Below are positions 8,546 through 64,000 of a stretch of 64,000 nucleotides of DNA, in pieces. The stretch covers positions 33,356,001-33,420,000 of the forward strand of contig NC_043003.1 in NCBI RefSeq assembly GCF_006345805.1. The letters run 5' to 3'. How positions within the stretch are numbered: the first letter of the stretch is position 1; every line of letters starts with the position of its first letter. The notes under the pieces were generated by a model. It was not told the DNA's origin and ran no database searches. It was given only the letters and a program-made list of their open reading frames with translations. Both the position numbers and the translations under genes were made by a program. The DNA comes from Octopus sinensis. Lineage: Eukaryota.

Positions 8546-9146
8546 ATTATATCTACACCCTAAATTCAAATTTCATGTTACTGACTTTAATTTTTCATAG
8601 GTTTAGATGGGCGATGCACAACTTATTTTCTACTCTAAAATCTATGAACGTCTTCAATATTTCTGCCTAAATTAATATCTGCTTTATGTGTTAAAAATTG
8701 CAGTATCGGGAGAACAATACTTTTGTTCTTTCGTGTATATAAAGCGCACAAACATGAGATCATTCCATATTATTTCATACCTGTCTTGTAACCAAATAAC
8801 TAGAATCACTATTAATATTACATTTTATTGGCGACAAGTATAGCCAAAAATCTAGAATTTACATTATTCTATTTATGATAAGTCGATAATAGGTAGTTTC
8901 TCATAGACATAGTATGACTATATGCAGATAAGTATCTGTTGTAAAAACTATGTAGAAAGAGAAAAGCTTTCCAGTTGAACTGCTTAAAACAGAGAGAAAG
9001 CACCCAAAGGTTATTTGATATATCAGGTTTTGTATTTGGCTTAACACATATTCAGGAGATATATAGAGAAATATTGGAAAGAAATACTTTCACTGGGCTG
9101 TAACATAACAATATATACTGATATACGAACACTCTACGCACACAAC

Positions 9147-9210
9147 ACCCATACATATGCATCCATATATATATATATATATATATATATATGGATGCAT
9201 ATGTATGGGT
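9147..9210. repeat. Perfect 64-bp palindrome centred on (AT)n at the array boundary
   Basis: ACCCATACATATGCATCC-(AT)n-GGATGCATATGTATGGGT. Confidence 0.97.
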
Positions 9211-9346
9211 TCCGTAATGGAATCGGCGGCTTATATTTATTTGCTGCCGATAAATTTGGCGCGAGTGCGATGATTTGAAAATTTTAGGTCAGATTGCCGA
9301 GGCAGGGACAGACGTGCCTCGTGAAAATATCTGTTCCGATCTGGCT

Positions 9347-9451
9347 ATTTCTACTGACGATCTAAGGGCCTATGGAAGATTGGCTTGATTTAATTTAATC
9401 AGGTTAGTTTACCATTAAACAGTAGATGAAACGGTGCATCGTATAAGAAAT
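9347..9451 (+). ncRNA. Type I hammerhead ribozyme, copy 1 (two single-base deletions)
   Basis: ATTTCTA-CTGACGA-TCTA...TAGAT-GAAA-CGGTGCATCG-TA-TAAGAAAT; lacks one T of stem I and the first A of stem II relative to copies 2 and 3. Confidence 0.65.
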
Positions 9452-9828
9452 TACAGGGTAAATGTTTTTTTAATTTTCTCCTGGTTTGCGGAATTAATGT
9501 TATTTTGCGGTTGAAGCTTGGCTGTTATTTCTAGTGGGTGAATGGCCTATTATGGCCGTTCCTTGACTGTGATGTTGAACTTATAAATGGTCTATGACTA
9601 TTTAATTTTTTCCCACTAGGCCGCTGGTGACAAAAAATTCTACAAAATTTTTTGCCACCCTATATTGATTAATTATGAATTTTCTGGTTGATTCCGTAAT
9701 GGAATCGGCGGCTTATTTTATTTGCTGCGATAAATTTGGCGCGAGTGCGATGATTTGAAAATTTTAGGTCAGATATTGCCGAGGCAGGGACAGACGTGCC
9801 TCGTGAAAATATCTGTTCCGATCTGGCT

Positions 9829-9934
9829 ATTTCTTACTGACGAATCTAAGGGCCTATGGAAGATTGGCTGATTTAATTTAATCAGGTTAGTTTACCATTA
9901 AACAGTAGATGAAACGGTGCATCGTATAAGAAAT
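9829..9934 (+). ncRNA. Type I hammerhead ribozyme, copy 2
   Basis: Stem I ATTTCTTA (9829-36)/TAAGAAAT (9927-34); core CTGACGA (9837-43); stem II ATCTA (9844-48)/TAGAT (9906-10); GAAA (9911-14); stem III CGGTGCATCG; GUA triplet with predicted cleavage after 9926. Confidence 0.88.
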
Positions 9935-10314
9935 TACAGGGTAAACGGTTTTTAATTTTCTCCTGGTTTGCGGAATTAATGTTATTTTGCGGTTGAAGCT
10001 TTGGCTGTTATTTCTAGTGGGTGAATGGCCTATTATGGCCGTTCCTTGATTGTGATGTTGAACTTATAAATGGTCTATGACTATTTAATTTTTTCCCACT
10101 AGGCCGCTGGTGACAAAAAAATTCTACAAAATTTTTTGCCACCCTATATTGATTAATTATGAATTTTCTGGTTGATTCCGTAATGGAATCGGCGGCTTAT
10201 ATTTATTTGCTGCCGATAAATTTGGCGCGAGTGCGATGATTTGAAAATTTTAGGTCAGATATTGCCGAGGCAGGGACAGACGTGCCTCGTGAAAATATCT
10301 GTTCCGATCTGGCT

Positions 10315-10421
10315 ATTTCTTACTGACGAATCTAAGGGCCTATGGAAGATTGGCTTGATTTAATTTAATCAGGTTAGTTTACCATTAAACAGTAGATGAA
10401 ACGGTGCATCGTATAAGAAAT
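10315..10421 (+). ncRNA. Type I hammerhead ribozyme, copy 3
   Basis: Same architecture: stem I 10315-22/10414-21, CTGACGA 10323-29, stem II 10330-34/10393-97, GAAA 10398-401, predicted cleavage after 10413. Confidence 0.88.
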
Positions 10422-10542
10422 TACAGGGTAAACGTTTTTTTAATTTTCTCCTGGTTTGCGGAATTAATGTTATTTTGCGGTTGAAGCTTTGGCTGTTATT
10501 TCTAGTGGGTGAATGGCCTATTATGGCCGTTCCTTGATTGTG

Positions 10543-10575
<33 letters not shown>

Positions 10576-11746
10576 CATACATACACACACACATATATAT
10601 ATACATACATATACATACATATGTTTGTGTGTGTGTTTATGTGTATCTATGTGCGCGCGTACATAAATACGTATTGATTGAATCCAATATGTCTATTCAT
10701 TATATTTGGACAAAAGTGGATTCACTAAGCCAAAGTATGTATAATGTCATGTAAACAGTGTGTAGACTTTTAACGGTCACTTCATTCTAACTAACACAGA
10801 AGCGCCGTGATACTCACGGGAATAATGGAAGGAAGCATTGTCAGTATGGGCTTTTAGTCTCCAGGCAACAGAATTATTCTAACTTTCGCATGAGAATCCC
10901 TTTAAAAGAATCAAACAATGAATGCTGCGAGACAGAAGTCAGAAGTTATTGTCACCGACCAACCGCGTTAGCTTCGACTTCCGCACGTTTTTAACTCACT
11001 CTCAGCTATCCAACCTAACCAATATCCTGTTGGCCTTTCTCTAAAATCCGATACTATTTTCTGCCAACCAATCGCACTTAATAGCCATCCTGGCTTACAG
11101 AAGCACCAAACCAGCTACGATGCCGACAGAAGCTTACATTCAATGAACTGAAAGTCGTGTTGTCTTTGTAATTTTTGTTGTTGCTATTTCTTTTTCTATC
11201 TGTTCTTAATTCACATTGCCAATAAGCAGAAGGATAGTTAGACGCCATTGTTCTCAAATTCTATCCTCTTTCGTTCAGCTGGCGTCACTGAAGACATATC
11301 TGGAAGATGAGTTTCAAAGGCCTATCGTCTCAGTTTCCATTAGTAACGTTAATTTTCTTCCGTGTTCCTTCTAGAAGAAAGACGAAAATGACTTTTATGA
11401 CTAGTCTTTCAATATCTTCCTCACTGGTTCAGTCTGCAGGACATGCAGCCAATATTTTTTTTAAATTTTGTTTTTAATCTAATGTCTGAAAAATGTTAAC
11501 CGCATTTTTAATTTCTGCAATATCTTTAAAAAATAAATTTGTATCTCTTATTGAATAAAAGAAGTTGCAGCAAGAAAACACATTGGTAATGTCTGTAAAA
11601 CTCTGCAATGATTACATAACAATTTTGATAAGTAACGAATTAATGATATGGTCTATTTACGTGTTACTAATTACCATATCACTTGTTACAAATATAAGAA
11701 TAGCCTCTCTCATTTTACAGTATTAAAAGAAAGTAAAATTACATTG

Positions 11747-63013: not shown

Positions 63014-64000
63014 TAGATAAACTTAGATATGTTTCGACCAAAGATTGGTCCAGGCCATGTCTAACTTAATAGCACCACCTGATAGGATTATTCGAATCCT
63101 GTTTAAGTCAAGTTTTGTTCAAGTAGTGAGTTCTTGTTGGGTGAGTTGTATCCAGTTTTGTTCAAGTAGTGAGTTGTTGGGTGAGTTGTATCCAATTATG
63201 GGTGGCTTATCTGGTATTCTTTGAAGGAATCTATCCAGACTCTGTTTAAAGTTGATGGGATCCTTTTCCTCTTTGATCTCCCTCGGGACAATGTTAAATA
63301 GGGCAGGGTCTGTTGAGGAAAAGAAATTATGTTGCAGTGTACATGTATGTTGTGATCTTGAATTGGGCAGGGGACGTATAGCCCGTGGTCCAAGTCTTGG
63401 ATGAACCTTGAAGCTAATGTTTAGGTCGTTTGGGCAAAGTTGGCGGTATATTTTCCACATCGTACAAATGATGTACCGCTCACGGCGACGCTGGTGGGAG
63501 TAAAGTTTCAAGGCTTTAAGGCGATCCCAATAATCGAGAGCAGCCATGCCTTCAATTTGTTTGTCGTCAACAATTACATCCAGGTCTCTGATATTGTTAG
63601 AGGCTGTGAGCGGTTCCCCTGAAGGAAGAGAGTATGGTTGTTTTAGTGAGGAATTTCTTCCAAAATGCATCAGCTCAAATTTTCCCTCATTCAATTGCAT
63701 TTTGTTTCTGTCTGCCCATTGACTCACAGCATATAGATCAGACTGGAGTTGAGTTCGGTCTGCTTCTTCATTGACGATTTGCTGGAGCTTAGTGTCATCA
63801 GCGAATATTTTCACTTTGCAGTAATGTACGACACTGGAAAGGTCGTTTACGTAAATTATGAAGAGTAGCGGACCCAAAACAGTTCCCTGGGGAACACCGC
63901 TGGTGTCTTTTGTTGGGTTTGAGTGGACTCCATCAACTACAACATGTGTTCTATTCGCCAGGAAATACTTAATCCAGTGTAGAACTTTTCCACGGATTCC
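63010..64000 (-). mobile_element. CR1-like LINE RT C-terminal part and 3' end (runs off the window)
   Basis: GVPQGTVLGPLLFIIYVNDL...KIFADDTKL...WADRNKMQLNEGK (RT domains 4-6); in-frame internal deletion near 63560; 3' end abuts (AT)n. Confidence 0.95.

What the first reader, a model, noticed from the sequence alone, without database searches (positions are those of the whole stretch)
9210..10544. Candidate retrozyme-like system: ~485-bp tandem array with one hammerhead ribozyme per monomer
Seen: 2.8 near-identical non-coding units (482, 484 and a truncated 369 bp). Each has CTGACGA...GAAA...GTA arranged as a type I hammerhead on the + strand; copies 2 and 3 are canonical and copy 1 has two single-base deletions. 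Predicted cleavage sites at 9443, 9926 and 10413 would release 483- and 487-nt monomers. Established: tandem hammerhead repeats that self-cleave into monomers and circularise are known in animals (newt satellite 2, Schistosoma SM-alpha, non-LTR retrozymes of axolotl, coral and mussel) and are thought to be moved in trans by Penelope-like RTs. Inference: this is a young cephalopod retrozyme-like family with a monomer at the long end of those I recall. I do not recall one described from octopus, but I cannot search to confirm novelty.
Basis: partly seen in the sequence, partly recalled or inferred. Interest (0 to 1): 0.93.

Follow-up and report, generated by a model that had tools for sequence, protein, structure and literature searches.

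The report
Octopus hammerhead retrozyme tandem insertion
This 1.3-kb block is one young insertion of a small non-coding jumping element whose ~485-base units each carry a self-cutting "hammerhead" RNA motif; it is a new cephalopod example of a known class (animal retrozymes), and cutting and RNA circles remain untested.

Summary
Window 9210-10544 is a 2.8-copy tandem array (period 483, 97% matches). Copies 2 and 3 carry a complete type I hammerhead on the + strand; copy 1 is damaged by two 1-nt deletions.

The motif is not chance. A strict descriptor hits only these two copies in 64 kb and none of 200 simulated windows. Sister families about 80% identical keep all three helices through compensatory changes. 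Rfam misses it because helix II carries a ~57-nt extension.

The unit is a dispersed young family: about 2,700 monomers, about 1% from their consensus. Nearly every insertion examined lies in a (TA)n microsatellite, with 3' junctions at two or three fixed monomer positions and variable 5' ends. In 16 of 22 insertions a second, inverted arm joins head to head by microhomology. That is the Penelope-like-element (PLE) insertion pattern. The genome holds intact RT+GIY-YIG PLEs that also end in (TA)n, but their tails show no homology to this repeat.

Self-cleavage, circles and transcription could not be tested, because only contigs of uncertain RNA status were available.

Verdict: a new member of a known kind (non-LTR retrozyme), of moderate interest. 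This scan had already noted sister arrays elsewhere in this genome.

The parts
9147..9209 (.). 5' flank: (AT)14 microsatellite bracketed by a perfect 19-bp inverted duplication of the flank (CCCATACATATGCATCCAT / ATGGATGCATATGTATGGG). The array starts directly after it.
   Evidence: Sequence. The spurious miRNA alignments show the perfect 64-nt hairpin at 9147-9210.
9210..9691 (+). Monomer 1 (482 bp). Its hammerhead is damaged by two 1-nt deletions (helix I strand, and the A after CTGACG). Core box at 9354-9360; nominal cleavage site after A9443.
   Evidence: fails the descriptor.
9692..10175 (+). Monomer 2 (484 bp), with an intact hammerhead.
9829..9934 (+). Hammerhead of monomer 2. Helix I 9829-9836 pairs with 9927-9934 (8 bp). 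CUGACGA is 9837-9843. Helix II is 9844-9848 with 9906-9910, plus a long imperfect, G.U-rich hairpin extension at 9849-9905. GAAA is 9911-9914. Helix III is 9914-9917 with 9922-9925, loop UGCA. Predicted cleavage is after A9926.
   Evidence: covariation.
10176..10544 (+). Monomer 3, ending at monomer position ~365 (..GATTGTGAT|ATAT), one of the family's fixed 3' junctions.
10315..10421 (+). Hammerhead of monomer 3. Core box at 10323-10329, G12 at 10398, predicted cleavage after A10413, helix I 3' strand 10414-10421.
10545..10622 (.). 3' flank: (AT)n/(TA)n microsatellite, the target site.

Best explanation
The array is one young insertion of a non-autonomous, non-coding retroelement of the non-LTR retrozyme kind.

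Shown:
- Each ~485-nt unit encodes, on the + strand, a type I hammerhead with a canonical catalytic core, an 8-bp helix I, and a helix II whose base is A10.1-U11.1 and which carries a long hairpin extension.
- Helix III is short (3-4 bp) and capped by the palindromic loop UGCA.
- The family has about 2,700 monomers at many loci and inserts into (TA)n.
- Its 3' junctions fall at two or three fixed internal monomer positions, about 130 and 233-238 nt downstream of the cleavage site. Its 5' ends are arbitrary.
- Arrays run through the cleavage site up to more than 5 times, and there is usually a second inverted arm.
- The arms of an insertion share diagnostic variants and are joined by 0-9 nt of microhomology.

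Inferred:
- Transcripts of an array self-cleave after GUA, probably best as a double hammerhead formed through the palindromic helix III of two units.
- Monomers are ligated into ~485-nt circles.
- A Penelope-like RT/GIY-YIG enzyme nicks (TA)n. Both 3' ends prime reverse transcription at fixed internal sites of one circular (or uncleaved multimeric) RNA.
- Rolling-circle copying gives the tandem units, and the two cDNAs are end-joined.

The window's copy is a single arm.
For: Motif and chance.

Structure conserved across families:
- 91.3% of cells are paired, against 29-48% when partners are slid.
- Six pairs change on both sides: helix I three, helix II two, helix III one.
- In addition, 10.1-11.1 switches A-U to G-C between sister families (L052; L061-63).

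Folding: the + strand monomer folds at -145.7 kcal/mol (z -5.2), against -107.9 for the - strand.

Family size and youth:
- 2,674 hits of a family-specific 31-mer, 0 in the control.
- About 1% divergence from the consensus.
- 76 of 79 monomers have an intact core.

Insertion anatomy:
- (TA)n follows nearly all 3' ends, at fixed positions. The sister family uses the same two positions.
- 16 of 22 insertions are head to head, with microhomology joints.
- There are 45 array-fixed variant sites against 3.8 under permutation, and 28 of them are shared by both arms.

Candidate mobiliser:
- Autonomous PLEs are present: 5,029 GIY-YIG candidates and a 765-aa ORF with RVT_1 plus GIY-YIG.
- Five PLE copies end ..ACAAAT|(AT)n.

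Helix III loop: the double variant UGCA to UAUA, still palindromic, is propagated in at least 4 loci, while the single variants are only private.

Literature: the retrozyme model and PLE traits are in PMC7229834, PMC8557442, PMC4209133 and the preprint 10.64898/2026.07.22.740005.
Against: - Rfam gives no hammerhead hit even at E<=10. This is explicable by the 57-nt helix II extension set against a 45-position model, but no curated model endorses the motif.
- 10.1-11.1 is A-U and not the usual G-C, and some propagated arrays have U.U there. Activity could therefore be low.
- No tertiary loop contacts were identified.
- There is no proof of transcription, cleavage or circles. Only Logan contigs were available and their RNA status is a guess.
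- No sequence homology was found between the repeat and the tails of the six PLE copies examined.
- The covariation is mostly one split between two families, so it represents few independent events.
- Within the family there is no detectable excess conservation of the ribozyme; the family is too young for that test.
Confidence: 0.72

Rival explanations
1. It is the same retroelement, but the hammerhead is a weak or inactive relic. Arrays would be copied from uncleaved linear multimeric transcripts of parent arrays, and no circular RNA would be involved.
For: The A-U or U.U pair at 10.1-11.1. No Rfam hit. No RNA-level data. Arrays run through the cleavage site, so the template was uncleaved or religated at those junctions. 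Metazoan PLE hammerheads show low activity in vitro (PMC4209133).
Against: Core nucleotides are intact in 76 of 79 monomers. All three helices are kept by compensatory changes between families about 20% diverged. The palindromic loop 3 is preserved through a double change in propagated lineages. Linear multimer templates subject to 5' truncation would shorten arrays at each generation, yet arms of more than 5 units occur.
Confidence: 0.14
2. The element is mobilised by a LINE and not by a PLE. Twin priming at (TA)n tails would explain the inverted arms.
For: In three loci a LINE RT ORF ends just upstream of the (TA)n that holds the insertion (L016, L033, L062). Twin priming is known for L1 (my own knowledge).
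Against: The three LINEs belong to different families, their orientation relative to the repeat differs, and they share no tail sequence with it. The combination of tandem and inverted copies with (TA)n targeting is the described PLE signature (PMC8557442). PLE copies of this genome end in (TA)n with the same kind of junction.
Confidence: 0.08
3. It is ordinary satellite DNA amplified at the DNA level (unequal crossing-over or reintegrated circular DNA), and the hammerhead-like motif is incidental.
For: Tandem organisation. Hammerhead satellites were historically described as satellite DNA (newt, cave cricket; PMC2837043).
Against: Thousands of copies lie at many chromosomal loci as short arrays, each inside (TA)n, with fixed 3' ends and truncated 5' ends. 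The helices covary. The + strand has G.U-rich pairing that the - strand lacks.
Confidence: 0.04
4. It is an assembly artefact: a collapsed or duplicated repeat.
For: PLE-type tandem/inverted structures are known to trouble assemblies (PMC8557442).
Against: Unit-to-unit joints ('goes back 482') appear in contigs of four independent runs from two organism labels. The same architecture recurs at 22 sampled loci. The three units differ by private changes.
Confidence: 0.02

Closest known systems
Metazoan non-LTR retrozymes (mussel, coral, axolotl; Cervera & de la Pena 2020, PMC7229834)
   Same: Non-coding, AT-rich short tandem repeats with one type I hammerhead per unit. Short helix III with a palindromic loop. 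Highly self-paired monomer. Dispersed genomic copies. Co-occurrence with PLEs.
   Different: The monomer is ~485 nt, against ~170-400 nt. Helix II carries a ~57-nt extension and an A-U (not G-C) closing pair, so Rfam misses it. Circles and cleavage are not shown here. The host group is new (cephalopod).
Penelope-like elements and their pLTR hammerheads (PMC4209133, PMC8557442)
   Same: Insertion into (TA)n, partial tandems, an inverted 5'-truncated arm, a hammerhead with palindromic helix III. This genome's intact PLEs end in (TA)n.
   Different: There is no RT/GIY-YIG ORF in or next to the arrays. There is no detectable sequence homology to the PLE tails examined. The PLE tail motif here is a minimal variant with U3/A8, whereas this repeat has a canonical C3/G8 core.
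Hammerhead satellites: newt satellite 2, Schistosoma SM-alpha, Dolichopoda pDo500 (~500 bp; PMC2837043)
   Same: One hammerhead per tandem unit and a proposed double-hammerhead mode. pDo500 has a similar unit length and compensatory changes at 10.1-11.1.
   Different: Here the arrays are short (0.2 to about 6 units per arm) and scattered in (TA)n with clear retrotransposition scars. They are not long satellite blocks.

Membership tests
Hammerhead ribozyme, type I | Catalytic core C3-U4-G5-A6-N7-G8-A9, G12-A13-A14, A15.1-U16.1, H17 | tested here: met
   Copies 2 and 3 have CUGACGA, GAAA and A15.1..U16.1-A17. 76 of 79 family monomers keep the core.
Hammerhead ribozyme, type I | Three helices around the core, helix I open, supported by covariation | tested here: met
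   Helices of 8, 5 (plus extension) and 3-4 bp. 91.3% of cells paired, against 29-48% when slid. Six pairs with changes on both sides, plus the 10.1-11.1 switch A-U/G-C between sister families. Most changes lie on one family split.
Hammerhead ribozyme, type I | Match to Rfam Hammerhead_1 (RF00163) at the gathering score | tested here: not met
   No hit at gathering or at E<=10. The model has 45 positions, whereas this helix II holds about 67 nt.
Hammerhead ribozyme, type I | G10.1-C11.1 closing pair of helix II | tested here: not met
   A-U in this family and U.U in two propagated arrays. G-C in the sister family.
Hammerhead ribozyme, type I | Mg2+-dependent self-cleavage 3' of H17 | not testable with these tools
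   Needs in vitro transcription.
Non-LTR retrozyme | Non-coding short tandem repeats, low G+C, one type I hammerhead per unit | tested here: met
   (38% G+C; no stop-free stretch over 60 codons).
Non-LTR retrozyme | Dispersed multi-locus family with signs of retrotransposition | tested here: met
Non-LTR retrozyme | Expressed as linear and circular monomer RNA | not testable with these tools
   Only Logan contigs were available, with RNA status guessed. No raw reads, no read ends.
Non-LTR retrozyme | Co-occurrence with autonomous PLEs in the genome | tested here: met
Non-LTR retrozyme | Sequence relatedness to a PLE pLTR (as in Xenopus, preprint 10.64898/2026.07.22.740005) | tested here: inconclusive
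   BLAST gave no hits against six PLE tails or six GIY-YIG loci. Thousands of PLE copies were not examined.
Penelope-like element (autonomous copy or pLTR) | RT plus GIY-YIG ORF contiguous with the repeat | tested here: not met
   No such ORF in the array, in its flanks, or in 60 related loci.

The most novel reading that the evidence does not exclude
The junction anatomy may be the genomic footprint of twin, target-primed, rolling-circle reverse transcription of a single circular RNA at a (TA)n break. The features are two fixed internal start sites that are not the ribozyme cleavage site, arms that pass through the cleavage site up to more than 5 times, both arms sharing the same diagnostic variants, and head-to-head joints made by microhomology. 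That would be direct evidence for how animal retrozymes integrate. It would also imply that the mobilising RT recognises internal RNA sites and not a 3' end.
Probability: 0.35. Interest if true: 0.6.

Novelty: new member of a known kind. Interest (0 to 1): 0.4.

Why it matters
It extends ribozyme-bearing circular-RNA retroelements to cephalopods. It also shows that a hammerhead with a long helix II arm escapes the curated model, so such elements are under-counted. The clean, young insertions give an unusually readable record of how these elements integrate: fixed internal start sites, twin arms, microhomology joints and a (TA)n target shared with intact PLEs. That record could guide an experimental test of PLE-mediated mobilisation of circular RNA. 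The class itself and the proposed mechanism are already in the literature.

Tried and rejected
- Rfam at gathering and at E<=10 gave no hammerhead. The only hits were spurious miRNA matches on the (TA)n hairpins.
- ARAGORN found no tRNA-like unit in the array. I saw only a weak A-box-like match on the - strand by eye and dropped it.
- Sequencing runs: none was listed as RNA on record and none with the word RNA-Seq. All were contigs, so no read ends, strand or circles could be read. High word depth in the 'RNA?' runs is suggestive only.
- I tested for excess conservation of the ribozyme within the family and found no signal (rates about 1% everywhere). The family is too young for this test.
Smaller requests passed.
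- The canonical G-C sister-family loci (L061-63) turned out to be non-autonomous fragments too.
- The top six GIY-YIG loci were short ORFs without related tails.
- The hammerhead-like piece in L069 was not convincing.
- LINE adjacency was examined and judged to reflect (TA)n tails serving as targets, not partnership.

Full report
**Observation.**
- Tandem Repeats Finder reports one array at 9210-10544 with period 483, 2.8 copies and 97% matches.
- The three units (482, 484 and 369 bp) differ only by a few single-base changes and indels.
- CTGACGA occurs in the 64-kb window only at 9354, 9837 and 10323.
- In units 2 and 3 the + strand reads, in order: ATTTCTTA; CTGACGA; ATCTA; about 57 nt; TAGAT; GAAA; ACGG-TGCA-TCGT; A; TAAGAAAT.
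- This is a type I hammerhead with an 8-bp open helix I, a closed helix II, a 3-4 bp helix III and a GUA cleavage triplet.
- Cleavage would fall after 9926 and 10413, and after 9443 in unit 1.
- Unit 1 has lost one T of the helix I strand and the A that follows CTGACG.

**Is the motif chance?**
- A strict descriptor required CUGANGA, at least 4 bp at the base of helix II, GAAA, a helix III of at least 3 bp with A15.1-U16.1, H17, and a helix I of at least 5 bp.
- It finds only units 2 and 3 on either strand of the window, and nothing in 200 simulated windows.
- Rfam gives no hammerhead hit at the gathering score or at E<=10.
- The Rfam Hammerhead_1 model has only 45 positions. It does detect other, compact hammerheads in this genome, so the miss is best explained by the long helix II arm.

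**Relatives in the same genome.**
- The unit is a dispersed family. The first look gave 1,203 candidates, and 189 matches at 92-100% identity came from the 40 candidates scored.
- A family-specific 31-mer across the core box and helix II has 2,674 hits with up to 2 mismatches, against 0 in the control.
- 107 non-redundant monomers from 22 insertions differ from their consensus by about 1%.
- Of the 79 monomers that cover the ribozyme, 76 keep all core nucleotides and 64 are identical to the consensus over core and helices.
- The family is too young for a conservation test within it.

**Covariation.**
- A divergent variant seen as a loose end in one run led to sister families in the genome: 264 hits against 2 in the control.
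- Their 479-bp monomer is about 80% identical to this one over its whole length.
- I aligned twenty hammerhead segments of the families (A2) and counted pairs on the hammerhead structure. 91.3% of cells pair, against 29-48% when the partners are slid.
- Six pairs change on both sides: helix I three, helix II two, helix III one (G-C to A-U). The G.U pair of helix III becomes A-U.
- Between two further sister families, the base pair next to the core switches from A10.1-U11.1 (L052) to the canonical G10.1-C11.1, with the rest of the helix unchanged.
- Most of these changes lie on one split between families, so they are few independent events. They are nevertheless many coordinated substitutions.
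- The helix II extension is a long imperfect hairpin rich in G.U pairs.
- The + strand monomer folds at -145.7 kcal/mol (z -5.2). The - strand folds at -107.9 kcal/mol.

**Helix III.**
- Stem plus loop form a 12-nt palindrome, perfect in the sister families and with two G.U pairs here. This is the layout that lets two units form a double hammerhead (Forster 1988, as cited in PMC4209133).
- In the genome the loop variant UAUA, a double change that is still palindromic, occupies whole arrays in at least 4 loci (7 monomers).
- The single changes UGUA (5 monomers) and UACA (3 monomers) occur only as isolated monomers.
- The numbers are small, but this is what selection for a palindromic loop in propagating lineages would give.

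**Insertion anatomy.**
- In 22 insertions, nearly all 3' ends are followed directly by (AT)n.
- These ends lie at monomer position 365/366 (..GATTGTGAT(G)|ATAT, as in the window), at 469 (..GATTAATTAT|ATAT) or at 473.
- The sister family uses the same two positions. These sites are about 130 and 233-238 nt downstream of the cleavage site, not at it.
- The 5' ends are arbitrary.
- Sixteen of 22 insertions have a second, inverted arm, with both 3' ends pointing outward into (TA)n.
- The arms meet at arbitrary positions with 0-9 nt of overlap or a few filler bases.
- Arms hold from a fraction of a unit to more than 5 units.
- Variants fixed in all units of an insertion number 45, against 3.8 (maximum 10) when monomers are permuted among insertions. 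Twenty-eight of them are shared by both arms. Each insertion therefore derives from one template lineage.
- The window's copy is a single arm. Its 5' end abuts a perfect inverted duplication of 19 bp of flank across (AT)14.

**Who moves it?**
- The combination of partial tandems, an inverted 5'-truncated copy and (TA)n targeting is the published signature of Penelope-like elements (PMC8557442). Retrozymes have been proposed to be their non-autonomous passengers (PMC7229834; preprint 10.64898/2026.07.22.740005).
- I checked that such elements exist in this genome. A GIY-YIG search gives 5,029 candidates, with many open frames of about 780 aa.
- One copy has an intact 765-aa ORF with RVT_1 (29.2 bits, just under the cut-off) followed by GIY-YIG.
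- Five copies end ..TTTTTTACAAAT|(AT)n. This is the same target and the same kind of junction as the repeat.
- Their tails show no BLAST similarity to the repeat. The link therefore rests on target and architecture, not on homology.
- LINE ORFs lie next to three insertions. They belong to different families, lie in different orientations and share no tail with the repeat. Their (TA)n tails are simply targets.

**RNA level.**
- Twenty-four runs were listed, and 20 of them, under four organism labels, hold the unit. All are Logan contigs, and their RNA status is a guess.
- Laid on one monomer, contigs of all four chosen runs cover it and show the unit-to-unit joint. This argues against an assembly artefact.
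- Contigs cannot show transcription, strand, ends or circles. Self-cleavage and circularisation therefore remain inferences from the class.

**Comparison and verdict.**
- The element works like, and by its DNA features belongs to, the metazoan non-LTR retrozymes.
- It differs in unit length (~485 nt, close to the ~500-bp cricket pDo500 satellite, PMC2837043), in the long helix II arm that hides it from Rfam, and in the A-U pair at 10.1-11.1.
- Library searches found no cephalopod retrozyme report.
- Earlier notes of this scan describe sister arrays of 350-600 bp elsewhere in this same genome, with the same reading. Those are unchecked AI notes and not independent evidence, but they mean this is not the first sighting.
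- I rate it a new member of a known kind, of moderate interest. Its main added value is the junction anatomy, which fits twin target-primed rolling-circle copying of one RNA.

Noticed in passing
window 9147-9209: A perfect 19-bp inverted duplication of the upstream flank across (AT)14, directly abutting the 5' end of the array. It may be a fold-back (self-primed) product of the (TA)n target made during integration, or it may be a pre-existing palindrome.
   Followed up: partly
L070-L075 (e.g. L073:859-1040): Intact PLE copies carry, about 110 nt before their (TA)n junction, a minimal hammerhead-like motif. Its core box reads UUGAUAA, i.e. U3 and A8 where C3 and G8 normally pair, followed by GGUUC..GAACC, GAAAC and the palindrome AUGU. 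This is a possible natural U3-A8 covariant of the core pair.
   Followed up: partly
window 63122-64000 (- strand); L016:1-1040: A LINE reverse-transcriptase fragment at the window's end is 94-98% identical to the LINE that lies next to another insertion of this repeat. LINE tails of three different families end in short repeats followed by (TA)n that host retrozyme insertions.
   Followed up: partly
L016:~990-1000; L033:~1750-1760: GTCGAAAC boxes sit in or near LINE 3' tails. Other notes of this scan report rearranged hammerheads in LINE tails of this genome. I did not examine these.
   Followed up: no
G000:C9:97597-98599, C9:647369-647887, C10256:213-239, C11:11240357: A sub-lineage of this family has loop 3 changed from UGCA to UAUA (both palindromic) and has been propagated to several loci. 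The single-change intermediates occur only as private mutations.
   Followed up: partly
L037, L052, L056, L061-L063: Sister families carry a 10-nt insertion at the tip of the helix II hairpin and a one- or two-base bulge next to the 10.1-11.1 pair. This is reminiscent of the bulged base described for PLE hammerheads.
   Followed up: no
window 9136-9221 and 10533-10700: Rfam miRNA models (mir-3149, mir-1277, mir-297 and others) match the (TA)n/(CA)n hairpins at E down to 1e-9 but far below their gathering scores. These are low-complexity false positives.
   Followed up: yes
G000:C16:25146363-25146839: Two Rfam-positive compact type I hammerheads lie 431 bp apart on the same strand. This is probably another retrozyme family of this genome.
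   Followed up: no
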